Shown piece by piece: positions 16,471 through 61,339 of a stretch of 64,000 bases of DNA. Both the position numbers and the translations under genes were made by a program. The notes under the pieces were generated by a model that saw nothing but the letters and a program-made list of their open reading frames with translations, was not told the DNA's origin and did no database searches. Within the stretch, counting starts at the first letter, position 1, and each line of letters opens with the position of its first letter. Where the stretch lies: positions 29,450,001 through 29,514,000 of the forward strand of contig NW_027361751.1 in assembly GCF_039654945.1 (NCBI RefSeq), written 5' to 3'. This stretch comes from Dendrobates tinctorius (Eukaryota).

Positions 16471-17099
16471 CAGACCCAGGAATCTGCAAAAGAAAAAGCA
16501 CAAAAATCAGCAAATGTCCTAACACCAGCAAAGGCGAATAAGACCTTGGTGTGAAATGATCGCTCCCGATCCCAAGAACAGGTCAATTTATGCTGTGGAT
16601 TTTTTTTTTTTTTTTTTTTACATCACATGAGAATCAGATCCCATAAAATCTCATCCACAATGCTGCCGTATCAAGACGCATGGGATTTTCAGGCCAGAAA
16701 TTTGCTGTGTTTTCATTTAATACTTACATGAAGATACTGATTTGAGGGAGATCCTGCAATTAGTAGGTAATTGTTACCCTGAAGGGCTCGCCGGAGTGTA
16801 TGTTCATGCAAACTTTTTTTTTCCAGATTTTTTGTTATTTTTAATATGATCCACTTTGAAAATGATAAAAAACACGAAAAACAATCCTAAATTTAATATC
16901 TTGTTGTTTATGTGTTCAGGTTTTTGAGCGTGTTTCAAATACTTTAGCTTTACAAAAACGCCAAGAAGTGAGCTGACCAATCTTCAAGAGATTTCTGCTT
17001 GGAAGAATCTCCATAGTTTACAACTTAAGTCAATGGGAAGGCGCCAGCGTTTTTTTCCTTGCTTAGAGCGGTTGTCTGGGGTACAAGTTTGCATATACA

Positions 17100-18664
17100 C
17101 ACTGCTCAAAAAAATAAAGGGAACACTGAAACAACAGAATCTAACTCTAAGTAAATCAAACTTCTGTGAAAACAAACTGTCCACTTTGGAAGTAACACTG
17201 ACAATCAATTTCACATGCTGTTGTGCAAATGGAATAGACAACAGATGTTAATTATTGGCAATTATCAAGACACCCTTAGTAAAGGAGTGGTTCTGCAGGT
17301 GGGGACCACAGACCACATCTCAGTACCAATGCTTTATGGCTGATGTTTTGGTCACTTTTGAATGTTGGTTGTGCTTTCACACTCGTGGTAGTATCAGACA
17401 GGCTCTACAACCCACACAAGTGGCTCAGGTAGTGCAGCTCATCCAGGATGGCACATCAATGCGAGCTGTGGCAAGAAGGTTTGCAGTGTGTCAGCGTAGT
17501 GTCCAGAGGCTGGAGGTGCTACCAGGAGACAGGCCAGTACACCAGGAGACGTGAAGGGAGCCAAAGGAGGGCAACAACCCAGCAGCAGGACCGTTACCTC
17601 AGCCTTTGTGCAAGGAGGAACAGGAGAAGCACTGCAGAGCCCTGCAAAATGACCTCCAGCAGGCCACAAATGTGCATGTGTCTGCACAAACGGTTGGTCT
17701 GTGTGCCCAACGTCCACAGATGGGGGTTGTGCTCACAGCCCAACACTGTGCAGGACGCTTGGCATTTGCCACAGAACACCAGGATTGGCAAATTCGCCAC
17801 TGGCGCCCTGTGCTCCTTACAGATGAAAGCAGGTTCCCACTGAGCACGTGACAGACAAACGTTACAGAGTTTGGAGACGCTGTGGAGAGCGATCTGCTGC
17901 CTGCAACATCCTTCAGCATGACCGGTTTGGCAGCGGGTCAGTAATGGTGTGGGGTGGCATTTCTTTGGAGGGATGCACAGTCCTCCATGTGCTCGCCAGA
18001 GGTAGCCTGACTGCCAATAGGTACCGAGATGAGATCCTCAGACCCCTTGTGTGACCATATGCTGGTGCGGTTGGCCCTGGGTTCCTCCTAATTCAGGATA
18101 ATGCCAGACCTCATGTAGCTGGAGTGTTTCAGCATTTCCTGCAAGATGAAAGCATTGAAGCTATGGACTGGCCCGCTCGTTCCCCAGACCTGAATCCGAT
18201 TGAGCACATCTGGGACATCATGTCTCGCTCCATCCACCAACGTCACGTTGCACCACAGATTGTCCAGGAGTTGACTGAAGCTTTAACCCAGGTCTGGGAG
18301 GAGATCCCTCAGAAGAACATCCACCACCTCATCAGTAGCATTCCCAGGCGTTGTAGGGAGGTCATACCAGCACGTGGAGGCCACAAACAATTCTGTGCAT
18401 CATTTCTTTGTCTTCAAGTATTTCTACTGAAATTCGATCAGCCTGTAATTTGATTTTGATTTGAATCTGCACTTTGATTTTCAGTATCCTTCCAAATCCA
18501 GACCTCCATGGTATATTAATTTTGATTTTCATTGATAATTTCTATATTTTATTGTTCTCAATGCATGCCACTATGTAATGAATAAAGATTTGCAACTGGA
18601 ATATTTCATTCAGTGATATCTAGGATGTGGTATTTTAGTGTTCCCTTTATTTTTATGAGCAGTG
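17100..18664 (+). mobile_element. Tc1-like DD34E transposon, full length, decayed
   Basis: TIRs CACTGCTCAAAAAAATAAAGGGAACACT / AGTGTTCCCTTTATTTTTATGAGCAGTG|TA; TDESRF, QDNARPH and [13 protein letters not shown] motifs with frameshifts and stops. Confidence 0.92.
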
Positions 18665-19249
18665 TATGTGATCAGGTGCCGGGCTACACATCCGTAGCCT
18701 AGATCAGTACAAGTGAATTGTAACTCAGAAAGTGGCTGGGAGTATGCATTTCACATACGGCAACCCATTTTCCAAGCTATAATACTCTCGCCCAGGAACA
18801 GAAGAGATCCATAAATTGATATAAAATAAGTTTATTCATCAATATATTAAAAAATAAGTTAATAAAAAATAAGTATATTATTGGGAATGTATCAAAAAGA
18901 GACACACACTATAGCTGGCATAAAAAGTGATCAAACAGGAACAGAACATAGTGTCAAAATAATCTATTAAATAATTCCAAATTCAGTGTTTATTAGAAAT
19001 TACATACCCTAGAAAATTTGCAAAATCAACAGTGTATTAAATACTTATTTTCCCCACTGTATGTGCCCATATAGGACAGATATATACATCCAACGCAGAC
19101 CCCGACCCCTCTCTTCAGGACACCACGTTAATAAAGGCTCCATGAAAGGGGTAGGGGCTCTGGGTTACTTTTACTATCTTCCCCTATTACTCAAAACATT
19201 TAGCACCTATCAGAAGATAACCGGCTCCTGGGCATGATAATGTCATGTT

Positions 19250-28474: not shown

Positions 28475-29118
<644 letters not shown>

Positions 29119-29165
29119 TTAATATCCACCATCCCCTGTGTAACGGTGATCATTTTTTTCTGTAG

Positions 29166-40604: not shown

Positions 40605-41420
40605 TATAATAAAATCGATAGTTTTCTGGGTACATATAATATACTATATTGGACTTGCAGACCTATGTAACACCACAGATATCTCCCCCTAGGCAGTAGA
40701 ATTAAATATATTTATATTATATTTTACTTCTCATTATCCCCCTGTAGTGTAGACACATACACCCCTTAATATCTCCACAACCTGCACCGTCCACCATAAT
40801 TAGATTGTCCCCTTTTTAATATCCTCATCCCCTATATTCTCCTTTGTGTAATTATATAAATACTCTACATTATAATCATCCCCGCCTGTTAGTGTAATAA
40901 CACCCATACAAGTAAATGATTCCCTCCGCCGTCCCCCCCCATGTAATTAGATATGCCATTTATGGTCCATCCATTTAGACAGCACAAGGGCCCAAAAACC
41001 TGATTGTGTGACTGTAGCATCAGATGTGTCTGGCAAATTTTAGGTGTAAATTCCAAATCCAATATCTGTTTTCCAAAACCCCTTTTTCAATATGTGGAAA
41101 ATAAATTTGCAGATATTTGGGCACATCGCGCATATATATATTTCAATCTGCAATCAATTTTATGCTGTGAACACAAATTACAGTGGGACTATGGTGGTCT
41201 CTAGAGAACCATTAACCCTTCTGCCTTTTTCAAGCCAATATACCACAAAATGTATAGAATATCATAGTAACAAGTGCTATTCTGTACAATATACAGGAAA
41301 AAAAGGGTAAACTGATATATTATGGGAGGGAAAAGGTGAAAAATACCAGTGTATGGCAGCCATTGGAGGGATAAGTCAAACGGAAGCCAATAATGTCGTG
41401 TATGTGGTCTTATATACAAA

Positions 41421-42722
41421 CTAGCTATGAACCCGTTCTACGCCCGGGTGGTGGGCATTTTTATTGGTATATGGTCTCCCATCCTGGTATGTGCTGCACC
41501 CCTCACCCCCCAATCCTGGTATGCATGGTACCCCCTTATCCATATACTGGTATTCATGGTTCCCTCACCCTCCAATCCTGGAATGCATTGCACCCCCTCA
41601 TCCCTATCGTGGTATCCATGGTACCCCCTCATCCCTATCGTATGCATGGTCCCCTCACCCCCCCTATCCTGGTATGCATGGTCCCCTCATCCCGCAATCC
41701 TGGTATGCATGGTCCCCTCACCCCCCCAATCCTGGTATGCATGGTCCCCTCACCCCCCCCCTATCCTGGTATGCATGGTCCTCTTACCCCCCTATCCTGG
41801 TATGCATGGTCCTCTCACCCCCCTATCCTGGTATGCATGGTCCTCTCACCCCCCTATCGTGGTATGCATTGCACCCCCTCATCCCTATCGTGGTATGCAT
41901 GGTACCCCCTCATCCCTATCGTGATATGCATGGTCCCCTCACCCCCCCTATCCTGGTATGCATGGTCCCCTCACCCCCCCTATCCTGGTATGCATGGTCC
42001 CCTCACCCCCCCTATCCTGGTATGCATCCCCTCACCCCCCCTATCCTGGTATGCATGGGCCTCTCACCCCCCCTATCCTGGTATGCATGGCCCTCTCACC
42101 CCCCTATCCTGGTATGCATCCCCTCACCCCCCTATCCTGGTATGCATGGTCCACTCACCCCCTACCCTGGTATGCATGGTCCACTCACCCCCTATCCTGG
42201 TATGCATGGCCCTCTCACCCCACTATCCTGGTATGCATGGTCCACTCACCCCCCCCAATCCTGATATTAATGTTCCTCCTCACCCCTATTAAACTGCACA
42301 TATTAAAAAGAAAAACATTTATACTCACCTTTCTTCTCTGTGTCCAGCGCTGTCCTGTTCTGGGCGTGTTATGGTGCCGGACTCAGCGCCTGCGCAGTCC
42401 TCGCTTTCCGCCACCATGTTCTTGAAGACACCACTGCAGTGTGTGTTCAACAAAATGGCGGCTGTAAGCGCGGACTGCGCAGGTGCAGATTCCGGCGCTA
42501 CAACACGCCAACTCCAGACACCTGAAGACGCAAGACCCCGCCGGCAACAGCCTCACCGGGTTCAGTAAAGTGTTGCGGAGATCGCGGTATGCGTTCAGTG
42601 CTTACGCATTACCGCGAACTCCTGGGAGTCTGCGTCACTGGGTCCAGACTGCGCAGGCGCGTCGCGCTTGCGCAGTCTATAGAGGCTTCAGACAGAGTGA
42701 CGCTTAGCTGTTATATTATAGA
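41421..42722 (-). mobile_element. Non-autonomous Helitron
   Basis: Minus strand A|TCTATAATATAA 5' end; CTAG|T 3' end; subterminal hairpin ACCCG...CGGGT (41431-41449); no TSD. Confidence 0.82.
41465..42290. repeat. About 30-32 bp C-rich minisatellite (CCCTCACCCCCCTATCCTGGTATGCATGGT) inside the Helitron
   Basis: Directly visible tandem array. Confidence 0.95.
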
Positions 42723-42899
42723 TAATACTGTGCACCTTCCATAGAATATTGCTGCCTAAAGTACACATATACACTCGCTACACAGACTTTCACACAGTCA
42801 TGTTCTCACACAGATGCACAAACTACATTGAGATATATATACACTGCTTAAAAAGTAAAGGGAACACTTACATTGTGTTTAACTCCAAGTCAATTTATG

Positions 42900-43760
42900 T
42901 GTTAGCGACTCCTGGAGTGGACCCTCTGGGTCGCGGCACCAACCCTCCCAGGGCGAGCTAGCCTAGTGAGGACCACCCCCTATACAGGGAGTGTCAGGAG
43001 CAAGCCCCAGGGGATACGATACCACGACAGCTGGCACCAGGCGGCCGGCTCACAGGAGATACGAGACTGTGTGACTGGAGGGTGCAGGATACTAGGGAAC
43101 ACAGGAGAATACACCGGAGTGTGCTGAGTACAGGATAGTGCAAGGCGGGTACACGTGGGCACTTAAGGCGTGTAGCGAGTAACAAATCCGGAGGTAGACA
43201 AAGCAGGACGCGTGCAAGGAGCACGACAGAGTACAGAATGAGGCAGCAGTCGTGCCAGGAGGTGTAACAGAACACAGGAATAAAGTGAATGCCAGGAGGC
43301 ACGACTGAGCGAGAAACAAGGGACAGGATACGAGAGGATGTGCCAGAAGGCACAACTGAGCATGAAGCAACAAGGGTTCAGAGCAAGTGCTAGGAGCACC
43401 ACAGAATAGCAGACAGAGCAGAGGACCTGAGAACAGCGCACAGCCAGGCTGGGACACAGCTGACCCAGCCAGGAAGCACAACAATAATCAGGCACGTCTG
43501 ATATGGCACATGACTACTACTGGTTCCGGGTCAGGACCTAGCCAGAAAGCACATGACTACTACTGGTTCCGGGTCAGGTCCTCCATTACCATAGAGAGTA
43601 CCGAGCCCTATACAGCACTGACAGGAGCACGCAAGCACAAACGTGACATGGAGGAGAAGACCCGGGGACGAGAGCTGCGCGTGCGCACCCGAGGGACCGC
43701 CGTACCGGAGGGAGTGACGTCGGGGCCGAAGCCCCGCCTCCTGGTGAGGGCGGCATAACA
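42900..43760. mobile_element. Solo LTR (861 bp)
   Basis: TGTTA...TAACA termini; perfect 5-bp TSD TTATG. Confidence 0.88.
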
Positions 43761-45052
43761 TTATGAAATCAACCTGTCCAGTTATGAAGCAACACTGATT
43801 GTGAATCAATTTCTCCTGCTGTTGTGCAAATGGAACAGACAGCAGGTAGAAATGATAGGCAATTAGCAAGACAACCCCTATAAAAGAGCGGTTCTGCAGG
43901 GGGTGACCACAGACCATTTTTCTGTTATCATCCTTTTCGACTGTTTTTTTGGTCACTTTTGCATTTTGTCATTGCTCTCACCCCTAGAGTTACAGTACAG
44001 TAGCATGAGGTGGTGTCTACAACCCACAGAAGTTGCTCACGTAGTGCAGCTCATCCAGGATGGCCCATTAATGCAAGCGGTGGCAAGAAGGGTATCTATG
44101 TCTGTCAGCACAGTGTTCGGAGCATGGAGCAGATTCCAGGAGACATGGAGGGGTCATAGTAGGGCAACATCCCAGCAGCAGGACCTCTACCTTCCTCCTT
44201 TGTGCAAGGAGAAACAGTGCCAGAGCCCTGCAACATAACCTCACAGTCCACCATGTCTGCTCAAACTGTCAGAAACAGACTCCATGAGGGTGGTATGAGG
44301 GCCTGAAATCCATGAGTGGGTGTTTTGCTTACAGCCCAACTCTGTGCAGAGCAATTGGCATTTGCAGAGAACACAAAGATTGGCAGTTTTGACATTGGCG
44401 CCCTGTGCGCTTCACGGATGAGATCAGGTTAACACTTGCACATGTGAAAGAGTCTGGAGACGCCGTGGACAACATTCTGCTGCCTGCAACATCCTCCAGC
44501 ATGACTGGTTTCTGGTCCCTGAAAAATGCCCACAGGAAAATTGCCCACACAGAAAATTGCCCACACAGAAAATTGCCGATTGCAGCATCATGAACTTTAA
44601 GATCTAAGATTTTTGAGGTGTAAGGTGAGGATGTTCACATGATATGTGATCAACTTGTGATTTACTGTTGATCTAGTGCAAAACTGCAAAAATGAAGATC
44701 TGTGTTTGTAGCAGTCTGTCATTATCAGCAAAAGATAGATATAGTCTGCTCTCATCTCTCACTGATTCTGCCTTACTCTTCCCACCAGCCTAAAACAGCA
44801 GTACATGCAGAACCAGGAGCAGTGTGTGATGCAGAGGAGCCATCACTGCTATCAGTACTCACAAAAGTATCACTGTATTATCTGTGGAGTTACATGTCAC
44901 ATGTAATACATTAACATCTCAGTGGGAGCCCACCAAAAGCAGGGAGCTGCTGGCAGAGACAGATGTTCCTGGAAGCCCAGAAGGCACAGCAGAAAGCTGA
45001 GATTCTGCAACTTGAACTACCTTGTGTTCTTGCTGAGAATGTATGTTTTTTG

Positions 45053-45980
45053 CAGTGGTGTAACTGGAGTCCGATGGGCCCCAGTGCGAAATTTGGACCT
45101 GCCCCCCCCCCCACACACACACACGTTGGTCAGATGTATGGGCCACTGTAGTGTTCTAAATTCTATAAAGACTTATGAATTGCCCCCTTCATTATGTAGT
45201 AAAATGTCCCCCATCCTGGTATATATGCCCATCATCCTGGTGAATATGTCCGCATTCTGGTATATATGGTCCCCATCCTGGTATGTATGGTCCACATGGT
45301 CTCCATCCTGGTATATATGCCCCCTTCCTGGTTTACATGGTCCCCAATCCTAGTGTATATGTCCCCGTTCTGCCCCTAAAGATAATTAAAAACAAAAACA
45401 TTCTTCTCACCTTTCCTCTGCTCCCACGTCGCCCAGGGTCTTTTGTAGCTACTGTACAGCCCGGCAGCTGACATCGGAGTGTGCGCCATTGCCATGCGCC
45501 GCTCCCTGTGGCTTCTCCGACGTCAGCAACACGATGCATGTAATCTGGATCTGCATCTTCAGTGAGGACGGAGAACCAGCAGAAGCAGGCACCTGTACCC
45601 CTGTGCCTGGTCGTAGCCTTGTTTCCTGCGACCACAGTCGTTGCACCTCTGTGCTTTTTTCTGTTGGTGAACCAATAGTCTTACCAATGTGTGTTACCCG
45701 CACCCTGTGTTGTCTGAGTGGTGTTCTACCCATGGGGATCGAGTGTGGGCATTAAGTGGGATGAGCTCTGGTTCTTGCAGGCTCTCGAAAGACAGCCAGG
45801 CCAGCAGACAAAAGCCTCCACTGACCGGTGTGTCTCCTTAGTGATGTCACTGACCAACAGAGGACCCGGAAGCGCCGCTCTCCTATTCATTGGCAGTGAA
45901 TCTGGCGCCTGCACTTCCTTCCCTGTCCACTTATGGCTACCAAGAGTAAGAGTGAACAGATCCTACGTAGTTATGTATCA
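45053..45980. mobile_element. Degenerate hAT-like non-autonomous element with a roughly 21-bp minisatellite (45205-45370)
   Basis: CAGTGGTGTAACT left end; weak AGTTATG right end. Confidence 0.45.
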
Positions 45981-46503
45981 TACACTTATACTGCAGGTGT
46001 GGGCAGGCATAGGATGAAGGAAAATGCAGAATGGATTGGAATCAGGGTCTCTAGGCTCATACACACCACACTGAGCGTGGAATGACAACTCGTAAGAACA
46101 GAATCTGTCCTCTGGGACTAGGTATGAGTGACCCGAACCTGTAGAGCCCGGAGCAGTCAGCTGGGCCCAGAGACCTGTGGTGAAATCCAGTCTGCATCTT
46201 CTTTGCTGCCTGTGTTGTGCTGTATTGTATTTTAATGGAGCCCATTGAAGTCACCGGACTTTCCTTGTTGACATTATTTCACATGTTCCTTCCAGCACTC
46301 CCCCACCCCCCCAATTGTTTTAAATTGGCAATCCTGTGATTCCTTTTGGTACAACCCCAGTGAACAACGGCTTTCCTGTTGTGCCAGCCAATTGTATTTT
46401 GGTTAAAACATGTACCTTAATAGCTCTATCCCTATATTTTTTTTCAATAAAAGTGTATTTTGAGTTCATCTCAAGTATTCTATTTCTTCATGTAGTGCAA
46501 ACA

Positions 46504-46730
46504 ATGGAGTTTTCAAGACGCCAGAGGAACAACAAAGTTGTGATTTACTTGGGAGTTTGAAGATCTTGCGTTTCATACTATCAGCGCAGCGGTGACTTGG
46601 AAATGACGACTGCATCGCTCTTCAAAGGGCCATTCAGTTCTCAAAACAAAAGATGACAACGTAGTTCAAGAACCAACAGAACATTATCATGACTCCTGCC
46701 CTCAAAAAGCCTAAGCAAATGTGCTGCAGA
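46504..46730 (+). pseudogene. FLYWCH zinc-finger remnant (transposase N-terminus)
   Basis: MEFSRRQRNNKVVIYLG /+1 fs/ FEDLAFHTISAAVTWK*RLHRSSKGHSVLKTKDDNVVQEPTEHYHDSCPQKA; both expected Cys codons are one change from TGY (TGA, GGC). Confidence 0.7.
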
Positions 46731-47786
46731 GCATCTCTCCTAGAATTCTATACTATTCTCCTGTCCTGCAGAGCATCTCACCTATACCTGTATACTATCC
46801 CCCTGTCCTGCAGAGCATCTCACCTATACCTGCATACTATCCCCCTGTCCTGCAGAGCATCTCTCCTAGAATTCTATATTATTCTCCTGCCCTTCAGAGC
46901 ATCTAACTTATAATTCTATATTTTTCTCCTGTCCTGCAGAGCATCTCACCTATACCTGTATGCTATCTCCCTGTCCTGCAGAGCATTTAACCTATAATTC
47001 TATACTATTCTCTGTCCTGCAGAGCATCTCATCTATAATTCTATACTATTCTCTGTCCTGCAGAGCATCTCACCTATAATTCTATACTATTCTCTGCCCT
47101 GCAGGGCATCTCACCTATAATTCTATACTATTCTCTGTCCTGCAGAGCATCTCACCTATACCTGCATACTATCCCCCTGTCCTGCAGAGCATCTCTCCTA
47201 GAATTCTATATTATTCTCCTGCCCTTCAGAGCATCTAACTTATAATTCTATATTTTTCTCCTGTCCTGCAGAGCATCTCACCTATACCTGTATGCTATCT
47301 CCCTGTCCTGCAGAGCATTTAACCTATAATTCTATACTATTCTCTGTCCTGCAGAGCATCTCATCTATAATTCTATACTATTCTCTGTCCTGCAGAGCAT
47401 CTCACCTATAATTCTATACTATTCTCTGCCCTGCAGGGCATCTCACCTATAATTCTATACTATTCTCTGTCCTGCAGGGCATCTCACCTATAATTCTATA
47501 CTATTCTCTGCCCTGCAGGGCATCTCACCTATAATTCTATACTATTCTCTGTCCTGCAGAGCATCTCACCTATAATTCTATACTATTCTCTGTCCTGCAG
47601 AGCATCTCACCTATAATTCTCTACTATTCTCTGTTCTGCAGAGCATCTCACCTATAATTCTATATTATTGTTCTGCCCTGGAGAGCATCCACGTATACTT
47701 GCATATTATCCCCCTGCCTGTCCTGCAGAGTATTTAACCTATAGATCTATGCTATTCTCTGTCCTGCAGAGCATTTAACCTATAAT
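46724..47786. repeat. 41-42 bp satellite (CTGCAGAGCATCTCACCTATAATTCTATACTATTCTCTGTC), resuming at 54070-54115
   Basis: About 25 copies; 332-bp higher-order duplication. Confidence 0.95.
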
Positions 47787-49904
47787 TGGATCACCCCCAG
47801 GGCTGTGGGATACTCGGTACCGGGCCGGTGTCTTAAAGGGATAGGTCGCGGTGGCAGTGACCAGGTCCGTGGCCCTTGGTGTCCATGTAAAATGGGTGAA
47901 ATGTAGCTGAATAAAGTTTATAGGTAGATGATTCGTGACGCCACCTGTGGTGCTCGGTAAGGAAGATGTTAAGCCGACGCTGTGGTGCAGACCCTCTGGG
48001 ACAGATGATGTGGCGCAGCAAAGATGTAATAGCTCCCCACAGGCAGAGCTGTAGTCCCAGGGCAGTAGTAATAGGTGTTGAGGTAGATGGTGTAGTGTTA
48101 GGCACAGAGATGTAGCAGTGCTGAGTGGGTTGCAGGAAGAATTCAAAGAACACAATAGAGTGTAGTTTCTTTTACCTTTACTGAAGGTACAGTCCAGGAT
48201 TCAGATTACAGGTGGTACAGGAATTGGTCAGCCTGGAAGCAACTTGGGAATCTCTCTATGCAGATAGGTTGTGTAGTCTCCTTCCTAGTGCTAATCTGAA
48301 GTACTTGCAGTTCTGAATTACACTCAAGTTCCTCTTGCTTGCTGTTACTTGAACTCCACTCGCATGGCAGGCAGCTGTAGCCTTCTCTCTCTGGCTCACA
48401 CACGTTGCTGCTGTGACTCCGAGTCTTAGGTGGGAACAGAGCATTTACAGCCTCTTGTTCCTCCGGTTTCTGCTGCAGGATCATTAGTATCCATACAGCC
48501 TCGGACACCGGGGTCCGGTCAATGCGCTTCAGCTGGGAGTGAGCTTAAAGGGGTTGTCTGGGCTTTTCACATAATCTCAGTACATATTTGGGCTGCAGAA
48601 TTATGACAATAAGTAATTTACTTTCTGTCACTAGTTTGCACGGTTTTCTAGATATTCTGAACAGAACGTCCAAGGGGGGGGTGTTATGGCATTGAAATGA
48701 GAACTAGTCGTAACCTCCTACTCTACTCCAAACATGCCCTCTATAGCAACAACCCCACCCTCCATAGCTACAGGCCCTCCCCGTCCACATGAAGAAGCCC
48801 TCATCACACAGTAAGGAATAGTGATGGGAAGTTCAGCTCTTTTTAGTGATCCGGCTCATTCGGCTCCGCTCACCATAAAGAGCCGGCTCTTTTGGCTCTT
48901 TAAACGGCTCTTTTTTAAATAGAAATCCGTTTTCCACAGTCTTCGTTCTAGGTCTTTGCCTGTAAAGTGAGGGCCTCATTATACACCTGTATAAGGATCT
49001 AGTGACGCAGTGTAGACTGTTATTCAGCATTGCTGCTTCCTCAGATTGTCAGCTCTTGTGATCAGCCCCCGGCTGAGTGGGTTGCAGGAAGAATTCAAAG
49101 AACACAATAGAGTGTAGTTTTTTGTTAATGTCCTTTGTGAATTAGTAAGTGCTGTGATATGTGTTGGTGCACCTGATGCATCCTGATCCTGATGCAAACG
49201 CAGGTCCGTGCGTCCCTATGTTAAGTATAGGGATGTAATCTGGCTCAGGATGCATCAGGATTGCTACACATCACAGCGCACCGTACCACAACGCTAGTGT
49301 GAACGCAGACCCACTCGTACAGCCCCTAACCAGGTGCCCCCATGTCATATACATGCTCCCAATACATTATCATTACCACACTGTAACACAGGGCATAAGC
49401 CCTTCTAGTGAAACATCACTATATGACAGAGCAGCGTGCGGACATAGTCTATATTATGTCTGCATACTGGTCCCATACAGCACTTCCCTCGCTTCCGAGC
49501 ATGCTCAGTGCCGCAAAACGGATCCCTGCACACGGAAGCACATGGATCCATGTTGTCCTGGATCCGTGCCCCATAGAGCTCCATGTTAATTCCAGACGTG
49601 TAGCCGCGGATCCGTGCGTCTCCCTGCGCCTGCGTGTTTTTCAGATGACACAAAACTGCAACAAGTTGTGTTTTTGTGCATCTTATAAAACATGCCGACA
49701 CAGCGATCCGTGGGAAAACGGTGACATCTGGATGCACAGTCCCATCCTTCACCACTACAAGTCAATGGAGACAAAAACGGATCCGTGTGCATCCAAAATA
49801 TGCAAGTGTGACACCAGCGTCACCCTATATAATGATTGGGGCTGGACCTGATCTCTCCACAGGTTTTGCCTAAAATCACTTTATATTCCTTCCCCTACCC
49901 TTAG

Positions 49905-50118
49905 GGCTCATACTCACTTGCGAGAGAGTCGCGTGATTCTCGTGCGAGTCTCTCGCATGGAAACCTGGCACTGCTGCCGGCACTGGGACTGGAGCGTGCG
50001 TCTGCATAGAAATACATGTAACCACACGCTCCGGTCCGAGTGCTGGTGGCAGTGCCAGGTTTCCATGCGAGAGACTCGCACGAGAATCACGTGTGTCTCT
50101 CACAAGTGAGTATAAGCC
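49905..50118. mobile_element. Harbinger-type palindromic MITE
   Basis: GGCTCATACTCACTTG ... CAAGTGAGTATAAGCC; about 95-bp arms. Confidence 0.8.
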
Positions 50119-50179
50119 ATTAGCAGAAACAACTGCCGCCGTCTATCCTCCTCCCTGTAGTGTTGTCCTGAATCCTCCT

Positions 50180-50498
50180 GGCCCTGCGTTCAACGGGATC
50201 CGTTACATAGCGGCACTAACGCTATGTAGCAGATGCGTTAACGCACCCTTTGGCCGCAATGATACTAACGCATCCAAAATCAGCATGATGTGTTACTTCA
50301 TGACGCACCCTTGAACGCGGTCTGCAGCATTTGTGAGTGCGTCATGAAGTAACGCATCATGCTGATTTTGGCATCCGTTTGGATGCGTCAGTAGCAATAT
50401 GGCCAATGGGGGCGTTAGCACATCCGTTATATAGCGTTAGTGCCGCTATGTAACGATCCCGTTGAACGCAGGGCCATTAACGCAATGTGAACCTGGCC
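50180..50498. mobile_element. Harbinger-type palindromic MITE (left end truncated)
   Basis: GGCCCTGCGTTCAACGGGATC / GATCCCGTTGAACGCAGGGCC; right end TGTGAACCTGGCC|TAA. Confidence 0.65.
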
Positions 50499-51458
50499 TA
50501 ATACTATGAGAAAATGATATACCAAACAATGTGCGGAGTCCCTCCTCCTACACATACCATGTACTGTATGTATAATGAAGTGTATATTTGGGACTAAAGG
50601 TAACACACAGGTCATTGCAGATGATAATGACAAACAATGTGCTGCGTCCCTCCTCTTACATATAGTCACATACCATATATGCCATGGAGAAACTGGCAGG
50701 ATATATTTGGGACTGAAGGGTAAACTCACGTGCATTTATTCACATCTCCTCCTCTCCTGACTGCTCCTCCCCCCCAGATGAGTCACAGTCAGGCTTCACT
50801 AAGCTACCAGGCGCCAAAAAAAAAATATCGGCTCGTTCACCCTGCAGAGCCGACTCATTTCGTTCACAGCAGGGAGCCGGCTCTTTGTATCGGATCGTTC
50901 ACGAACGACATATCACTAGAAATGAATTCTTCCCCTCCAGCAGCCTCAGTGCAGAGAGCAGAGAGCTGCTCCTCCCCCAGACACACACTGAACAGTTATC
51001 TATGGAAAGTGAAACTAGTGAGGAGGTAAAATCGTCCTGTATTCTGGGCCACTCCATGATTACCATACATAACTCATCAGTGATTCCTTCCCTCACTGTC
51101 CTAGGCTGCTGGCAGCAGTGAGAACAGACTATGTGATGGCCAGTGATGGGGGTCTGAAGCTTCTAATCTGCACAGGGGATGGCAGTCACTGATGTAATCT
51201 GTTGTGTGACAAAGCCTCTGCTGTGTGAATGAGACAGCTCTGTGTCACTGATGTCTTCACACAGCAGCAGATTTGGTGCAGTGTATGTGCGAAGCTCCAC
51301 CAAACTCCCAAACTCCCAGCAAGCTCCAGTGACCAGCACCACCCACTGCCCACTCATTGGCTGGCAGTAAACTGCACCAGCACTCATCTTTATCATCATT
51401 CCAGCAATGGAAAGAACACAGCAGTGATCCTGTATTTGTGAAAGCAGCACAATACATA

Positions 51459-53065
51459 CAGTGGGGCAAAAAAGTATTTAGTCAGTCAGCAATAGTGCAA
51501 GTTCCACCACTTAAAAAGATGAGAGGCGTCTGTAATTTACATCATAGGTAGACCTCAACTATGGGAGACAAACTGAGAAAAAAAAATCTAGAAAATCACA
51601 TTGTCTGTTTTTTTTTTCATTTTATTTGCATATTATGGTGGAAAATAAGTATTTGGTCAGAAACAAAATTTCATCTCAATACTTTGTGATATATCCTTTG
51701 TTGGCAATGACAGAGGTCAAACGTTTTCTGTAAGTCTTCACAAGGTTGCCACACACTGTTGTTGGTATGTTGGCCCATTCCTCCATGCAGATCTCCTCTA
51801 GAGCAGTGATGTTTTTGGCTTTTCGCTTGGCAACACGGACTTTCAACTCCCTCCAAAGGTTTTCTATAGGGTTGAGATCTGGAGACTGGCTAGGCCACTC
51901 CAGGACCTTGAAATGCTTCTTACGAAGCCACTCCTTCGTTGCCCTGGCGGTGTGCTTTGGATCATTGTCATGTTGAAAGACCCAGCCACGTTTCATATTC
52001 AATGCCCTTGCTGATGGAAGGAGGATTGCACTCAAAATCTCACGATACATGGCCCCATTCATTCTTTCATGTACCCGGATCAGTCGTCCTGGCCCCTTTG
52101 CAGAGAAACAGCCCCAAAGCATGATGTTTCCACCACCATGCTTTACAGTAGGTATGGTGTTTGATGGATGCAACTCAGTATTCTTTTTCCTCCAAACACG
52201 ACAAGTTGTGTTTCTACCAAACAGTTCCAGTTTGGTTTCATCAGACCATAGGACATTCTCCCAAAACTCCTCTGGATCATCCAAATGCTCTCTAGCAAAC
52301 TTCAGACGGGCCCGGACATGTACAGGCTTAAGCAGTGGGACACGTCTGGCACTGCAGGATCTGAGTCCATGGTGGCGTAGTGTGTTACTTATGGTAGGCC
52401 TTGTTACATTGCTCCCAGCTCTCTGCAGTTCATTCACTAGGTCCCCCCGCGTGGTTCTGGGATTTTTGCTCACCGTTCTTGTGATCATTCTGACCCCACG
52501 GGGTGGGATTTTGCGTGGAGCACCAGATCGAGGGAGATTATCAGTGGTCTTGTATGTCTTCCATTTTCTAAATATTGCTCACACAGTTGATTTCTTCACT
52601 CCAAGCTGGTTGGCTATTGCAGATTCAGTCTTCCCAGCCTGGTGCAGGGCTACAATTTTGTTTCTGGTGTCCGTTGACAGCTCTTTGGTCTTCACCATAC
52701 TGGAGTTTGGAGTCAGACTGTTTGAGGGTGTGCACAGGTGTCTTTTTATACTGATAACAAGTTTAAACAGGTGCCATTACTACAGGTAATGAGTGGAGGA
52801 AAGAGGAGACTCTTAAAGAAGAAGTTACAGGTCTGTGAGAGCCAGAAATCTTGATTGCTTGTTTCTGACCAAATACTTATTTTCCACCATAATATGCAAA
52901 TAAAATGAAAAAAAAACAGACAATGTGATTTTCTGGATTTTTTTTTCTCAGTTTGTCTCCCATAGTTGAGGTCTACCTATGATGTAAATTACAGACGCCT
53001 CTCATCTTTTTAAGTGGTGGAACTTGCACTATTGCTGACTGACTAAATACTTTTTTGCCCCACTG
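51459..53065 (-). mobile_element. Tc1-like DD34E transposon, nearly intact (transposase 52698->51676, 340 codons, one TGA at codon 40)
   Basis: TA|CAGTGGGGCAAAAAAGTATTT TIRs, about 210 bp and near-identical; WSDETK / QHDNDPKH / SPDLNPIE with 34-residue D-E spacing. Confidence 0.96.
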
Positions 53066-55758
53066 TACATACACCCCCCAACACTTCACACTGTTACAGC
53101 TGCTGACTGGACAGGCTGCTCCCATCAGTATTTGTGTCATTAGAGACACAGTGCTCACACGTACACTGCACCAAATCTGCTGCTGTGTGAAGACATCAGT
53201 GACACAGAGCTGTCTCATTCACACAGCAGAGGCTTTGTCACAGAACAGATTACATCAGTGACTGCCATCCCCTGTGCAGATTAGAAGCTGCAGACCCCCA
53301 TCACTGGCCATCTCACAGTCTGTTCTCACAGCTGCCAGCAGCCTGGGACAGTGAGGGAAGGAATTACTGATAATGAGTTATGTATTGTAATCATGGAGTG
53401 GCCCAGAATACAGGACGATTTTCCCTCCTCCTCACTAGTTTCACTTTCCATAGATCACTGTTCAGCTTGTATCTGGGGGAGGAGCAGCTGGGTGGTCTGC
53501 TCTCTGCACTGAGGCTGCTAGAGGGGGAGGATTTGTTACTGTGTGATGAGGGCTGCTTCATGTGGACGGGGAGGGCCTGTAGCTATGGAGGGTGGGGTTG
53601 TTGCTATAGAGGGCATGTTTGGAGTAGAGTAGGAGGTTACGACTAGTTCTCATTTCAATGCCAGAACACCCCCCCTTGGACGCTCTGTTCAGAATATCTA
53701 GAAAACCGTGCAAACTAGTGACAGAAAGTAAATTACTTATTGTCATAATTCTGCAGCCCAGATATGTACTGAGATTATGTGAAAAGCCCGGACAACCCCT
53801 TTAACTTCAGCTCAATCCTTCCTAGTTCGTCTCTCCACGTCCACACTCTTCCCCCTCGCTGCACAATCTTCTGACTAACTTCCCTTTCCGGGCCACAGAG
53901 AGCAGCTCCTCAACAGTTTGTTTGAGCTCCCCCTGCTGGCCTGGAGTGGAAACTGTGCTGTGTGCTGGAATTACCTGATAGAGATCCTTCATTGCTTCGA
54001 AGCATGACATCACACTCCCTAGGAGAGAGGTAATGCCACTGTGGCAACCGTACTCCTGAGGGCGCCACATAATTCTATACTATTCTCTGTCCTGCAGAGC
54101 ATCTCACCAATAACTCGCTACTGTTTTCCTGTGGGTATTCATGTCTGTGGGCAATTTTCTGTGGGTATTTTTCACATATCATGTGAATATCCTCACTTTG
54201 CACCTCAAATATCATAGATCTGAAACTTTGTGATGCAGCAATTGGAAATTTTCTATGTGGGCAATTTTCTGGTCACCACGGTTTGGCAGTGGGTAATTGT
54301 GTGGGGAGGCATTTCTTTGGAGGGTCACACAGCCCTCCATGTGCTCGCCAGAGGTAGCCTGAATGCCATTAGGTACTGGGATGAGATCCTCAGACCCCTT
54401 GTGAGACCATATGCTGGTGCGGTTGGTCCTGGGTTCCTCCTAATGCAGAACACTGCCAGACCTCATGTTGCTGGAGTGTGTCAGCAGTTCCTGCAAGATG
54501 AAGGCATTGAAGCTTTGGACCGACCTGCCTGTTCCCCAGACCTGAATCCGATTGAGCACATCTGGGACACATTATTCCATCCACCAATGCCACATTGCAC
54601 CACAGACTGTACAGGAGTTGACTGATGCTTTAATCCAGGTCTGGAAGGAGATTCCTCAGGAGCCCATCTGCCGCCTCATCATGACTATACTCAGACATTG
54701 TAGGGAGGTCATTCTGGCACGTGGAGGCCACTGTTACACGTAGTATATGGCTTCAGGGGTGTGGTTTGCAGAGCAAGAGGAACGGAGCTCTTAAATTTTA
54801 AATATTTAATCCGGAAAGGTAGGCAGTCTTTATAGGAAAAAAATACACAAAACTGATAAAAAAAAATGGGAACAAAACAATACTGTATATAGAATCACAT
54901 AAAATAAAAGGGATAACAAAAGAAAAGTACTAAATTTGTGTCACGGAAATGGCTCAGTGCTTACCGGAGGCAGGTACTCCTTAGGAAACGGGCAGAACCC
55001 ACAGCAAGCTGTACCTTCCAGAACTGACAAGACCAAAACCCAAACTCTGATTTTTATTAGATGAAGGGTATGCTCTCATACCTCCCCTTCGTAGGCTCAT
55101 ATAGGGGCTGGTTGTAGAATGTGCTAGGTCTTTTAGAATTTTACGAGATCCCCAAATTTCAGGATATCTTCATCCCAGGAGATACTGTCACATTTCCCAT
55201 CACGATTTTACCTTTCTATAGAGATGAATCATCGCATGGATGGCACCATCTATCTGACCATTATTAAGTTGGATCTGTTCAGCCAGCCTTATGGTGATGT
55301 GAGTGAATGTGGTAGGTTTGTCCCTTCACTACGACACCAAAAATAGATCTCCCATAAATTTTGGATCAATGAAAACCCAATATTCATTACTGATCACTGG
55401 ATCCAGGATGTCTAAATCCTTTGAATAGAGGCAGCTCTTATCTCAGAAATGTACTTCTGTGCCTCTGAAGTACACAAATCCAAGCCTCGGTGGCTGGTTC
55501 TCAAAGCAGATCACTGCTCTAATTACCTGCTCATGACAGCGAGCCCTACTCCAAAGGAGGTTGCAGCATTAGCTCTTTTTCATTTCCTCAGTCATAATTA
55601 ATCCCATATGGGCAATATGAGGGTGATATGTCCCTTCTCCGGAGAGGGCTGTATTTTTTTTTTTCTCTGTGACAAACCCTGCATAATGTGCAGGATTTCT
55701 TCAAGACTATTTGAGGATCCTACAGAAAATGCTGCAGACTAACAAAACATCTGGCTTA

Positions 55759-56197
55759 GGCTACTTTCACATCAGCATTTTTTAGCGCAGCGCTTCATGC
55801 GGAATAGAAATGCATGCAAAAACCGCATCATGCGTTTTGCATGCGTTTGCGTTTTTTAGGCGCATTTTAACCAGTTTCAAGCAATGTTAACTCTTAAAAC
55901 GCATGCGTTTTTTAATGCAGGCGTGCGCATGTCTATGGGAACGCAGGCGTGCGCATGGACTGTAACGCATTATTTTGTCGCAAGTGTGCGCATGCTTTTT
56001 TTTACGCCGTTGGACGGACTCAAAAATGCAACAGGTTGCGTATGGCGCGCCTAGGCGCACACCTTAAAAAACGCATGCGCACAAAAACGCATATGAACGC
56101 GTGCAAACGCTAGACCATGCGCACGCCATGTTAAACATAGGTGACGCATGGACGTGCACGATGCACTGCGCAAAAAACCGCTAATGTGAAACCAGCC
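55759..56197. mobile_element. PIF/Harbinger-type MITE
   Basis: TTA|GGCTACTTTCACAT ... ATGTGAAACCAGCC|TTA. Confidence 0.8.
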
Positions 56198-57054
56198 TTA
56201 GTGTTGCTAGTGTATTTCTGAAATGGTGTTTGGGCAGACTTTAATCAACATGTAATGCGCAAACAGACTTTCATGCTAAAAGCTACCGTCGTAATTTTGA
56301 GCCGTACGTGTAATTAGTTCACTCATTTTGCGTCTAGTCCTCCATATGGCGCCGAGTCTGAAAGATGCACTGCCACACTTTGCTTCCATCCCTATCTGCC
56401 ACCGACATAACTACGTGTAGCGCTGGCAAATCTTGCACATGCGAGGAGGCTACGTAGCGAGGCGCATGCGCTAGGTTTTTCTCATGGAAATGCCCACACT
56501 AGGTTACAGCACACACGCTGTCCTTCGACACTGTACACCCTGAAGTGATCGGTTGTACATCAATGAGCGACGTAGGTGCTGCACTGCTGAAGCGTGTCCT
56601 CACACCAGACACCTTATGGCGCAAAGTGAGCAAGTGTAAGATTTTCTGCCCAGCACCTAACGTAAGAAAGACAGCAGCTATCAATCAATAGAGAGGCTGT
56701 ACCAAGCATGTACAAACTTAGAGAACACGCTCCTTGAAACACGCTTACTAACATATGGACTGCTCCGGGCAAACCGCGCCCCATCACATAATCGTGATAT
56801 ATGTTACCGTATGTGTCCTGTGGAATTGCTGGTACTTAGCAGTGTCAGTGAGAAACATTTTTGCGGTCTAGGACCCAAGTATGTAAATGACTTGGGACGA
56901 AGCACCTAATGCTTCATTTGCATATGCAATATAATTTATTTTTCAGGAATAAAGTCACAGAGAGCAAATAGAAAGATGTCAATGCATTAACCTTTAAGTT
57001 ACTTATATGAGCATATAAACAGTTCAGAGGGGTTAAACTTGCTAAGATTCCCTT

Positions 57055-59674: not shown

Positions 59675-61173
59675 TTTTGTAAGTTTCCCCACTGACAAAG
59701 ACATGAACAGCCTATAAATTTAAGGGTAGGTTAATTTTAACAGAGAGATAGAATATTAAAAATAAAATCCAGAAAATCACATTGTATAAATTATATAAAT
59801 TTATTTGCATTTTGCGGTGAGAAATAAGTGTTTGATCCCCTACCAACCATTAAGAGTTCTGGCTCCTACAGACCAATTAGACGCTCCTAATCAACCCGTT
59901 ACCTGCATTAAAGACAGCTGTCTTTGCATAGTCACCTTTATAAAAGATTCCTGTCCACACATTCAGTCAGACTCTAACCTATACAACATGGGCAAGACCA
60001 AAGAGCTTTCTAAGGATGTCAGGGACAAGATCATAGACCTGCATAAAGCTGGAATGGGCTACAAAACCATAAATAAGACAATAGTAAGAAAATGGAAGAA
60101 ATACAAAATGTCTGTCAATCAACATCGATCTGGGGCACAGGTTCAAAATCTCACCTCGTGGGGTCTCCTTGATCATGACAAAGGTGAGAGATCAGCCTAA
60201 AACTACACGGGGGGGGAACTTGTTAATGATCTCAAGGCAGCTGGGACCACAGTCACAGAGAAAACCATTGGTAACACATTACGCAGTAAAGGTTTTAAGT
60301 CCTGCAGTGCCCACAAGGTCCCCCTGCTCAAGAAGGCACATGAACAGGCCCATCTTAAGTTTGCCAATGAACACCTGGATGATTCTATGAATGATTGGGA
60401 GAAGGTGCTGTGGTCAGATGAGACAAAAATTGAGCTCTTTGGCATTAACTCAACTCGCCGTGTTTGGAGGAAGAGAAATGCTGCCTATGATCCAAAGAAC
60501 ACCATCCCCACTGTCAAGCATGGAGGTGGAAACATTATGTTTTCGGGGTATTTCTCTGCTAAGGACACAGGACTACTTCACCGCATCAATGGGAGAATGG
60601 ATGGAGCCATGTACCATAAAATCCTGAGTGACAACCTCCTTCCCTCCGCCAGGACATTAAAAATGGGTCGTGGCTAGGTCTTCCAGCAAGACAATGAACC
60701 AAAACATACAGCCAAGGCAACAAGGGAGTGGCTCAAAAAGACGTACATTAAGATAATGGAGTAGCCTAGCCAGTCGCCAGACCTTTATCCTATAGAAAAC
60801 TTATGGAGGGAGTTGAAGCTCCGAGTTGCCAAGCGACAGCCTCAAAATCTTTATTATTTTGAGATGATCTGCAAAGAGTGGGCCAAAATTCCTCCTGACA
60901 TGTGCACAAATCTCCATCAACTACAAAAAAAGTTTGACTGCTGTGCTTGCCAACAAGGGTTTTGCCACCCAGTATTAAGTCTTGTTAGTCAGAGGGATCA
61001 AATACTTATTTCTCACTGCAAAATGCAAATAAATTTATATAATTTATACAGTGTCATTTTCTGGATTCTATTTTCGATATTCTATTTCTCAATGTTAAAA
61101 TTAACCTACCCTTAAAATTATAGACTGTTCATGTCTTTGTCAGTGGGCAAACTTACAAAATCAGCAAGGGATC
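59675..61173 (+). mobile_element. Tc1-like transposon, decayed; right TIR runs into the assembly gap
   Basis: [16 protein letters not shown]..., [11 protein letters not shown] and [10 protein letters not shown]; TIRs about 59675-59840 and about 60995-61173. Confidence 0.88.
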
Positions 61174-61339
61174 NNNNNNNNNNNNNNNNNNNNNNNNNNN
61201 NNNNNNNNNNNNNNNNNNNNNNNNNNNNNNNNNNNNNNNNNNNNNNNNNNNNNNNNNNNNNNNNNNNNNNNNNNNNNNNNNNNNNNNNNNNNNNNNNNNN
61301 NNNNNNNNNNNNNNNNNNNNNNNNNNNNNNNNNNNNNNN
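61174..61339. other. Assembly gap (166 N)
   Basis: Run of N. Confidence 0.99.

What the first reader, a model, noticed from the sequence alone, without database searches (positions are those of the whole stretch)
42842..54740. Seven-level Russian-doll transposon nest with readable target sites
Seen: Tc1 (42842-54740) > Mutator-like element (44514-54277) > 41-bp satellite > solo LTR (47787-54069, TSD TAAT) > Kolobok fold-back (48549-53800, TTAA) > hAT (48819-50918, 8-bp TSD) > Harbinger MITEs (49905-50498). Side branches are a solo LTR (42900-43760, TTATG) and a young Tc1 (51459-53065, TA). About 1.3 kb of Tc1 now spans about 12 kb. The nest gives a relative chronology of six TE groups; the innermost Tc1 is the least decayed, as expected.
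Basis: seen in the sequence. Interest (0 to 1): 0.7.

Follow-up and report, generated by a model that had tools for sequence, protein, structure and literature searches.

The report
Deeply nested transposon pile in frog DNA
A 12-kb stretch is a real stack of jumping genes inserted one inside another (six elements deep, plus two side insertions), which gives the order in which these copies arrived, but such stacks are a well-known, ordinary feature of repeat-rich genomes.

Summary
Removing each proposed insert restores its host. The outer Tc1 realigns with the sibling Tc1 at 17099-18665. The 41-bp satellite resumes in phase. The solo LTR realigns end to end with the distant sibling LTR at 11620-12720. 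One arm of the fold-back matches the other with exactly 8 extra bases at the hAT site. The matching tags are TTATG, TAAT, TTAA, TTA and TA (all perfect), one 8-bp pair (6/8) and one decayed 8-10-bp pair.

Corrections:
- The outer Tc1 ends at about 54731 by truncation; its right end is missing.
- The satellite is an internal part of the long-TIR element, so there are six transposon levels, not seven.
- The "Harbinger MITEs" are two elements, and only the first (49904-50119) has a clean TTA duplication.
- "Mutator-like" rests on structure alone. No transposase or FLYWCH remnant was found, and Merlin fits equally well.
- The young Tc1 is a side branch, not the innermost level.

Only the two Tc1 elements have protein support. 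The Kolobok/T2 and hAT labels meet published end motifs. Assembly support from long reads could not be tested. Nested transposons and their use for relative dating are textbook, so interest is low. Other notes of this scan cover the long-TIR element and the young Tc1 of this same stretch.

The parts
42842..42899 (+). Outer Tc1, piece 1 (left end; TA at 42840-41 precedes CACTGC...)
   Evidence: Aligns to the sibling Tc1 from 17099. The sibling's TIRs are 17099-17131 / 18633-18665, 94%.
42900..43760 (.). Side branch: 861-bp solo-LTR-like element, TGTTA...TAACA ends, perfect 5-bp TSD TTATG
   Evidence: The outer Tc1 is contiguous with its sibling once this is removed. No Pfam hit and no sibling in the window.
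43761..44513 (+). Outer Tc1, piece 2 (decayed N-terminal half of the transposase region)
   Evidence: 73.7% to sibling 17167-17928. Only faint HTH hits.
44514..46719 (.). Long-TIR element, left TIR (about 44514-44649, with 16-bp sub-repeats) and non-coding body
   Evidence: TIR 87% to 54172-54271. The motif GAAAATTGCCCACA occurs 5 times, only at the two ends. No Pfam family in ten stop-free pieces of 72-148 aa in all, seven of them from this element (44696-46250) and three from the hAT body.
46720..47786 (.). 41-bp satellite (about 26 units, 332-bp higher-order period) inside the long-TIR element
   Evidence: The array continues at 54070-54132.
47787..48548 (.). Solo-LTR-like element, left part (TG start); TSD TAAT; ends with the TTAA used by the fold-back
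   Evidence: With 53805-54069 it makes 1027 bp, aligned end to end to rc(11620-12720), score 445 against shuffles of at most 58.
48549..48818 (.). TTAA fold-back (Kolobok/T2-type), outer part of the left arm; terminus AGGGGTTGTC
   Evidence: 97.8% to 53536-53804. TTAA on both sides. AGGRR end motif as in PMC6004289.
48819..50918 (.). hAT-like non-autonomous element (2100 bp including MITEs); ends TAGTGAT...ATCACTA; shared subterminal GAGCCGGCTC motifs
   Evidence: Exactly 8 surplus bases against the other arm; TSD 6/8. YARNG end (PMC3014272). A contig joins 48884 to 50862, and contigs run off into unlike sequence at 50918.
49904..50119 (.). MITE A: 216-bp palindromic MITE, TSD TTA (PIF/Harbinger-type TWA)
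   Evidence: Arms 85%. Termini and TTA read.
50179..50476 (.). MITE B: 298-bp palindromic MITE, perfect 22-nt ends (TGGCCCTGCG...); no clean TSD; superfamily open
50919..51458 (.). Fold-back: inner part of the left arm (to 51292) and left part of the loop
   Evidence: 92% to 53155-53533; alignment.
51459..53065 (-). Side branch: young Tc1, 1607 bp, 210-bp TIRs 99%, TA TSD; transposase frame of 340 codons on the minus strand (52698 to 51679) with one in-frame stop at 52581-52579
   Evidence: Pfam HTH_SB 7.7e-15, HTH_Tnp_Tc3_2 8.6e-24, DDE_3 8.5e-17. Family contigs skip 51461-53065.
53066..53800 (.). Fold-back: right part of the loop and the right arm (53155-53800)
53801..54069 (.). Solo-LTR-like element, right part (begins with the second TTAA copy; ends ...CCACA)
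   Evidence: 53993-54069 matches 11620-11691 on the opposite strand.
54070..54132 (.). Rest of the 41-bp satellite (starts with the second TAAT copy)
   Evidence: 86-91% to units in 46994-47634. The phase is restored: 27 + 14 = 41.
54133..54277 (.). Long-TIR element, right TIR
54278..54731 (+). Outer Tc1, piece 3 (DDE region); truncated, with no right TIR
   Evidence: 86.4% to sibling 17923-18384. DDE_3 2.1e-8. The tail is absent from the window.

Best explanation
This is a transposon nest built by successive insertions into DNA that was already dead transposon.

Order of events on the deepest path:
1. A Tc1 copy landed at a TA.
2. A 3.5-kb non-coding element with roughly 105-140-bp TIRs and an internal 41-bp tandem array inserted into its DDE region, making an 8-10-bp duplication.
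3. A 1.03-kb LTR-like element inserted into that array (TAAT). Either a full retrotransposon later collapsed to a solo LTR, or the LTR was already solo.
4. A 1.5-kb TTAA-targeting fold-back of the T2/Kolobok type inserted into the LTR.
5. A hAT-like non-autonomous element inserted into the fold-back's left arm (8 bp).
6. A PIF/Harbinger-type MITE (TTA), and a second MITE, inserted into that hAT.

Two side events:
- Another LTR-like element entered the outer Tc1 (TTATG).
- A near-intact Tc1 of a different family entered the fold-back loop (TA).

At some point the 3' end of the outer Tc1 was lost.

What is shown: the containment order, the duplications, the restored hosts, and the Tc1 proteins. 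What is inferred: the superfamily of the non-coding elements, and that the locus tolerates insertions because it is neutral. The nest has no function of its own. It records the relative order of these insertions.
For: - Excision restores the hosts: Tc1 against its sibling, LTR against its sibling, fold-back arm against arm with exactly +8 bases, and the satellite phase.
- Duplications are perfect or near-perfect at every junction.
- Inverted-repeat pairs are strictly nested, with none interleaved.
- Protein domains support both Tc1 elements.
- The ends TTAA + AGGGG match the published T2/Kolobok definition.
- The end TAGTG with an 8-bp TSD matches the hAT definition.
- TTA matches PIF/Harbinger TWA.
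- Contigs from public runs of two coded organisms join 48544-48546 to 53801-53804, and contigs from two runs of organism A (X1, X18) join 51460 to 53066. Other family copies therefore lack the fold-back and the young Tc1 at these very points.
- Word depth changes sharply at the predicted element borders.
- The window holds the same end motif in another small MITE at 28658-29122.
- Frog genomes are dominated by exactly these DNA transposon superfamilies (PMC4350176).
Against: - No read or contig spans the nest, so the assembly is not independently confirmed.
- The outer Tc1 has no right end, so its own duplication cannot be checked.
- The long-TIR element's duplication is decayed and its length is uncertain (8-10 bp).
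- The hAT duplication is only 6/8 although the surrounding arms are 96% alike.
- MITE B has no clean duplication and no empty-site comparison.
- The skipping contigs come from multi-copy families, not from the orthologous site, and the Tc1-skipping joint differs from the predicted empty site by one CATA unit.
Confidence: 0.9

Rival explanations
1. The nest is real, but one or more superfamily labels are wrong. The 'Mutator-like' element could be a Merlin-type or other element with an 8-9-bp TSD. The two 'solo LTRs' could be other elements with TG..CA ends. MITE B may not be Harbinger.
For: - No Pfam family was found in ten stop-free pieces of the long-TIR element and the hAT.
- No W.C context in six frames of 44514-46720 looked like a FLYWCH motif by eye (an informal check).
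- Merlin is defined by 8-9-bp TSDs, TIRs of 24-462 bp and a terminal GG. This element has GGT... at both ends.
- A survey could not confirm MULE transposases in vertebrates.
- The side LTR has no relative in the window.
- The sibling of the inner LTR shows no clear TSD.
Against: - Long TIRs with an 8-11-bp TSD are also the MULE hallmark.
- TG..CA ends with 4- and 5-bp perfect duplications and about 0.9-1.0 kb length are typical of solo LTRs.
- The inner LTR has a full-length homologue with the same ends.
Confidence: 0.5
2. Assembly artefact: repeats were stitched together wrongly, so the nesting does not exist in the animal.
For: - The region is all repeats.
- No contig spans it.
- Only about half of its 31-mers are in the best run.
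Against: - A mis-join does not create matching duplications at both sides of every insert.
- A mis-join does not restore host sequence, satellite phase and arm symmetry to the base.
Confidence: 0.03
3. The 5.25-kb 'fold-back' was made in place by an inverted duplication, or is two head-to-head MITEs, rather than one transposed fold-back element.
For: - The arms are long (about 640 bp).
- The inner part of the arms is more diverged than the outer part (92% against 97.8%).
Against: - The unit is bounded by one TTAA duplication and AGGGG ends. The inner arm ends carry no such ends.
- Contigs of other copies carry the same loop without the Tc1, at multi-copy depth.
Confidence: 0.05

Closest known systems
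Nested transposon clusters and their use for relative dating (maize intergenic retrotransposon nests; genome-wide 'transposition in transposition' and defragmentation analyses). The maize and defragmentation work is cited from general knowledge. Nesting is described as common in PMC6911290, and nested insertions plus chronology appear as search terms in the full text of PMC3403934, which was not opened.
   Same: Younger elements interrupt older ones, each insert is flanked by its own duplication, and the order of insertion is read from containment.
   Different: The classic examples are mostly LTR-in-LTR or SINE-in-SINE. This nest mixes several DNA transposon types with LTR-like elements in one stack six deep. 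It is a single locus, so it orders copies, not families.
T2-MITE / Kolobok elements of Xenopus (PMC6004289)
   Same: TTAA target duplicated on both sides and a terminal AGGRR motif (AGGGG here). The element is non-coding. Internal segments of such MITEs are known to form tandem arrays.
   Different: This copy is a 1.5-kb fold-back with arms of about 640 bp. No Kolobok transposase is present, and its subfamily was not determined.
Sleeping-Beauty-like Tc1 elements of fish and frogs
   Same: TA duplication, roughly 210-bp TIRs, and a transposase with HTH_SB, HTH_Tnp_Tc3_2 and DDE_3 domains.
   Different: The reading frame carries one in-frame stop at codon 40. Activity is not known.
Long hobo-type hAT elements of Anolis that carry nested transposons (PMC3014272)
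   Same: A hAT element with YARNG ends and an 8-bp duplication that holds later insertions. The TIR start resembles the CAGTGATGG type listed there.
   Different: This element is non-autonomous and is itself nested four levels down.

Membership tests
Tc1/mariner (young copy 51459-53065) | TA target duplication and TIRs | tested here: met
   TA on both sides; 210-bp TIRs 99%.
Tc1/mariner (young copy 51459-53065) | DDE transposase with paired HTH domains | tested here: met
   HTH_SB, HTH_Tnp_Tc3_2 and DDE_3 are all above the Pfam cut-offs. There is one in-frame stop.
Tc1/mariner (outer copy 42842-54731) | Homology to a complete Tc1 with TIRs, plus a DDE domain | tested here: met
   77% to the sibling at 17099-18665, which has 33-bp TIRs. 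DDE_3 2.1e-8. The right TIR and right TA are missing through truncation.
Kolobok / T2-MITE | TTAA duplication and terminal AGGRR (RR end) | tested here: met
   TTAA at 48545-48 and 53801-04; both ends read AGGGGTTGTC. Definition taken from PMC6004289.
Kolobok / T2-MITE | Kolobok transposase, or descent from an autonomous Kolobok | not testable with these tools
   The element is non-coding, and no eukaryotic repeat library or genome copy set is on hand.
piggyBac (alternative TTAA user) | TTAA plus CCC...GGG termini (from general knowledge) | tested here: not met
   The ends are AGGGG...CCCCT.
hAT | 8-bp duplication | tested here: met
   Exactly 8 surplus bases against the other arm. The two copies are 6/8 alike; the empty site reads GTAACAAA.
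hAT | Short TIR starting YARNG | tested here: met
   TAGTGAT at both ends. Definition from PMC3014272.
hAT | hAT transposase | tested here: not met
   No Pfam hit in the three longest internal pieces. The element is non-autonomous, which does not exclude membership.
PIF/Harbinger (MITE A 49904-50119) | 3-bp TWA duplication | tested here: met
   TTA on both sides, with GGGCT / TGGCT ends. Definition from PMC4482050.
PIF/Harbinger (MITE B 50179-50476) | 3-bp TWA duplication | tested here: not met
   The flanks are CCT / ATT, or TCC / TTA. The inverted repeat may extend further, and the borders are unresolved.
Mutator-like (MULE / Phantom) | 8-11-bp duplication and long TIRs | tested here: met
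   The duplication is 8-10 bp and decayed, judged against the sibling empty site. The TIR is roughly 105-140 bp at 87%. Definition from PMC6446971.
Mutator-like (MULE / Phantom) | MULE transposase or FLYWCH remnant | tested here: not met
   No Pfam family at E up to 1 in the long stop-free pieces. None of the four W.C contexts looked like FLYWCH by eye. Pieces shorter than 55 aa were not scanned.
Merlin | 8-9-bp duplication, TIR 24-462 bp, terminal GG | tested here: met
   GGTCCC / GGTGACC ends. Definition from PMC8101967. No IS1595-type DDE was found.
Solo LTR of an LTR retrotransposon | TG...CA ends and a 4-6-bp duplication | tested here: met
   Inner element: TG..CA with TAAT. Side element: TGTTA..TAACA with TTATG.
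Solo LTR of an LTR retrotransposon | The same sequence flanks a gag-pol body elsewhere | not testable with these tools
   The window holds only one distant homologue (about 60%), with no internal region beside it.

The most novel reading that the evidence does not exclude
The 3.5-kb long-TIR element is a genuine Mutator/Phantom-type (or Merlin-type) family that was active in a frog. Vertebrate MULEs have been questioned, so that would be of interest. Separately, the hAT copy picked up 56 bases of the very LTR it sits in, which would be a trace of template-switch repair at this locus. Neither reading is excluded and neither is shown.
Probability: 0.15. Interest if true: 0.45.

Novelty: already known. 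Interest (0 to 1): 0.2.

Why it matters
The locus is a clean, fully readable worked example. Every layer can be peeled off to the base, so it orders these eight insertions unambiguously. It could serve as a test case for transposon-annotation and defragmentation software on a frog genome. It does not change what is known: nested insertions, and dating by interruption, are standard. The one open point of wider interest is the superfamily of the long-TIR element. That is the subject of another note of this scan and cannot be settled from this non-coding copy.

Tried and rejected
- Pfam scans of 20 stop-free pieces across the nest gave hits only for the two Tc1 elements.
- A six-frame look for FLYWCH-like W.C contexts in 44514-46720 found nothing convincing.
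- Rfam at gathering score on 41000-56500 gave no match.
- The missing tail of the outer Tc1 was searched for by BLAST and by Smith-Waterman in 38000-61170. Scores were at shuffle level.
- Siblings of the hAT, the MITEs, the side LTR and the long-TIR body were searched for in the window. None was found.
- Public runs returned only short contigs of multi-copy families. They support element borders but cannot confirm the assembly or show the orthologous empty sites.
- Arm or TIR identity was rejected as a clock. MITE A's arms (85%) are less alike than the arms of the older fold-back that contains its host (96%), so arms need not start identical.
- The gene context of the nest (intron or intergenic) was not settled. 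A scan of ten long pieces at 57.3-63.9 kb found only another Tc1.
- The large protein searches were not used, because no claim here rests on them.
Full report
**Observation**

A self-comparison of 42000-55500 gives strictly nested inverted-repeat pairs:
- 44550-44649 with 54172-54271, 87%.
- 48545-48814 with 53536-53804, 97.8%.
- 50925-51292 with 53155-53533, 92%.
- 51457-51666 with 52859-53067, 99%.
- Two small palindromes at 49900-50123 and 50179-50476.

Tandem Repeats Finder shows a 41-bp array at 46720-47787 (25.7 units, with a 332-bp higher-order period). BLAST shows the same array resuming at 54069-54132. There are no N runs in the nest; the only gap is at 61174-61339.

**Peeling the layers**

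1. Outer Tc1.
   - After removing 42900-43765 and 44514-54277, the remaining pieces align as one sequence to the Tc1 at 17099-18665.
   - That alignment has 1337 columns at 77% identity and passes straight through both excision points.
   - The left end is TA followed by CACTGC, as in the sibling.
   - Homology stops at 54731, which is sibling position 18384.
   - The last 280 bp, with the right TIR, are not found anywhere in 38000-61170; alignment scores are at shuffle level.
   - The copy is therefore truncated, and 54740 is not a terminus.
   - Pfam finds DDE_3 in 54224-54622.

2. Side LTR, 42900-43760.
   - It has TGTTA...TAACA ends and a perfect TTATG on both sides.

3. Long-TIR element, 44514-54277.
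   - Both ends start GGT and carry the motif GAAAATTGCCCACA. This motif occurs five times in the window, only at these two ends, against a chance expectation of 0.1.
   - The sibling Tc1 gives the empty site ACCGGTTTGG. The nest has ACTGGTTTCT on the left and ACGGTTTGGC on the right. This is a decayed duplication of 8-10 bp.

4. Satellite and inner LTR.
   - The left flank of 47787 ends with the first 27 bases of the 41-bp unit.
   - After a second TAAT, the right flank of 54069 continues with the last 14 bases.
   - A 4-bp duplication therefore restores the unit exactly.

5. Inner LTR.
   - Without the fold-back it is 1027 bp with TG...CA ends.
   - It aligns end to end with the reverse complement of 11620-12720 at about 60% identity. 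The score is 445, against at most 58 for 20 shuffles.
   - The alignment runs through the fold-back's insertion point.

6. Fold-back, 48549-53800.
   - It has TTAA on both sides and AGGGGTTGTC at both ends.
   - With the hAT cut out, the left arm aligns to the right arm at 96.2% over 639 columns.

7. hAT, 48819-50918.
   - The right arm serves as the empty site, reading GTAACAAA.
   - The left arm has GTAAGGAA, then the element, then GAAATGAA. That is exactly eight surplus bases, and the two copies are 6/8 alike.
   - Both ends read TAGTGAT and share subterminal GAGCCGGCTC motifs.

8. MITEs.
   - 49904-50119 is a 216-bp palindromic MITE with TTA on both sides.
   - 50179-50476 has perfect 22-nt ends but no clean duplication.
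   - After MITE A's right-hand TTA copy (50120-50122), 56 bp of host sequence (50123-50178) lie between the two, so they are two separate events.

9. Young Tc1, 51459-53065.
   - It sits in the fold-back loop, with perfect TA on both sides and 210-bp TIRs with two mismatches.
   - Its minus-strand frame has 340 codons with a single in-frame stop at 52581-52579.
   - Pfam gives HTH_SB, HTH_Tnp_Tc3_2 and DDE_3, all above their cut-offs.

Sizes without inserts:
- Outer Tc1: 1260 bp.
- Long-TIR element: 3477 bp.
- Inner LTR: 1027 bp.
- Fold-back: 1535 bp.
- hAT without MITE A: 1881 bp.

**Evidence from public runs**

The runs hold only short contigs, and no piece spans the stretch, so the assembly could not be checked. 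The contigs still help in four ways:
- Contigs from two coded organisms join 48544-48546 directly to 53801-53804. These are LTR copies without the fold-back, cut at the TTAA.
- Contigs from two runs of organism A (X1 and X18) join 51460 to 53066. These are fold-back loops without the Tc1, at multi-copy depth, and differ from the predicted empty site by one CATA unit.
- One contig joins 48884 to 50862, a short derivative that links the two hAT ends. Many contigs run off into unlike sequence exactly at 50918.
- Word depth jumps at the predicted borders. For example, it is about 12,000 before 51435 and about 440,000-760,000 (mostly near 600,000) across the young Tc1.

These contigs come from family copies, not from the orthologous site.

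**What it is**

It is a stack of successive insertions into already inert transposon DNA. The containment order is a strict order of arrival for these copies:
- Outer Tc1, then the long-TIR element, then the inner LTR, then the fold-back, then the hAT, then the MITEs.
- The side LTR arrived after the outer Tc1.
- The young Tc1 arrived after the fold-back.

The satellite is an internal part of the long-TIR element, lying directly against its right TIR. It is not an insertion, so the deepest path has six transposon levels. The young Tc1 is a side branch, not the innermost level, although it is indeed the least decayed part.

Arm identity is not a clock. MITE A's arms are 85% alike, while the older fold-back's arms are 96% alike.

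**Labels**

- Only the two Tc1 elements have protein support.
- The fold-back meets the published definition of T2-MITE/Kolobok, namely a TTAA target and a terminal AGGRR (PMC6004289). It does not have the piggyBac-type CCC...GGG ends.
- The hAT meets the criteria of an 8-bp duplication and YARNG ends (PMC3014272).
- MITE A meets the PIF/Harbinger TWA criterion (PMC4482050). MITE B does not.
- The 'Mutator-like' element fits the MULE structure of an 8-11-bp TSD and long TIRs (PMC6446971). It fits Merlin equally well: 8-9-bp TSD, TIR of 24-462 bp, terminal GG (PMC8101967).
- No transposase or FLYWCH remnant was found in that element. PMC6446971 could not confirm MULE transposases in vertebrates. 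Its superfamily stays open.
- The two 'solo LTRs' have the right ends, duplications and sizes, but no full-length retrotransposon is available to anchor them.

**Comparison with what is known, and novelty**

Nested insertions and their use for relative dating are standard (and general knowledge of the maize nests and of interruption analyses). [quoted passage not shown] The locus is a tidy example, not a new kind of thing.

Other notes of this scan already cover the long-TIR element (s1-369604) and the young Tc1 (s1-369712) of this same stretch. I confirmed the latter. I found no FLYWCH signal for the former.

**Limits**

- There was no long-read check of the assembly.
- There was no orthologous-locus comparison.
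- No repeat library was available.
- The gene context of the nest was not determined. A neighbouring note places DIMT1 intron 7 at 30.8-31.7 kb, which I did not check.

Noticed in passing
window 49072-49127 and 48120-48174: The hAT-like element carries 56 bases that are 96% identical (49 in a row) to a stretch of the very LTR it is nested in. The distant sibling LTR has the homologous stretch, so the piece is LTR-native. Contigs of the abundant family that covers 48972-49074 leave this copy exactly at 49074. It may be filler from local templated repair, or a captured fragment.
   Followed up: partly
window 41499-42286 and 45204-45366: A 31-bp satellite (25 units) lies 550 bp upstream of the nest. 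It shares its core (CCTATCCTGGTATGCATGG) with a short 20-21-bp array inside the long-TIR element.
   Followed up: no
window 28658-29122: A MITE of about 465 bp is bounded by TTAA plus AGGGGTTATC / AGCGGTTGTC. This is the same end motif as the fold-back, so it is a second T2/Kolobok-type element in the window.
   Followed up: no
window about 59758-61112 (+), beside the N gap 61174-61339: A third Tc1 copy, about 74% identical to the young one, with HTH_SB, HTH_Tnp_Tc3_2 and a weak DDE_3 trace (E 0.0034, below cut-off) in separate frames. It is decayed.
   Followed up: partly
window 48811-48818 and 50919-50938: The hAT duplication and the 12 bases after it are far more diverged from the other arm (5 of 16 and 3 of 12) than the rest of the fold-back arms (about 4%). 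This is a local mutation cluster at the insertion site.
   Followed up: no
window 48819-49074 and 50838-50918, against 49246-49842: In public runs the hAT ends have a word depth 10 to 100 times that of the hAT body. The ends therefore belong to a very abundant short MITE family, and this 2-kb copy is a rarer long variant.
   Followed up: partly
window 42363-42509: A 147-bp palindrome (arms 81%) lies just upstream of the nest. It is probably another MITE.
   Followed up: no
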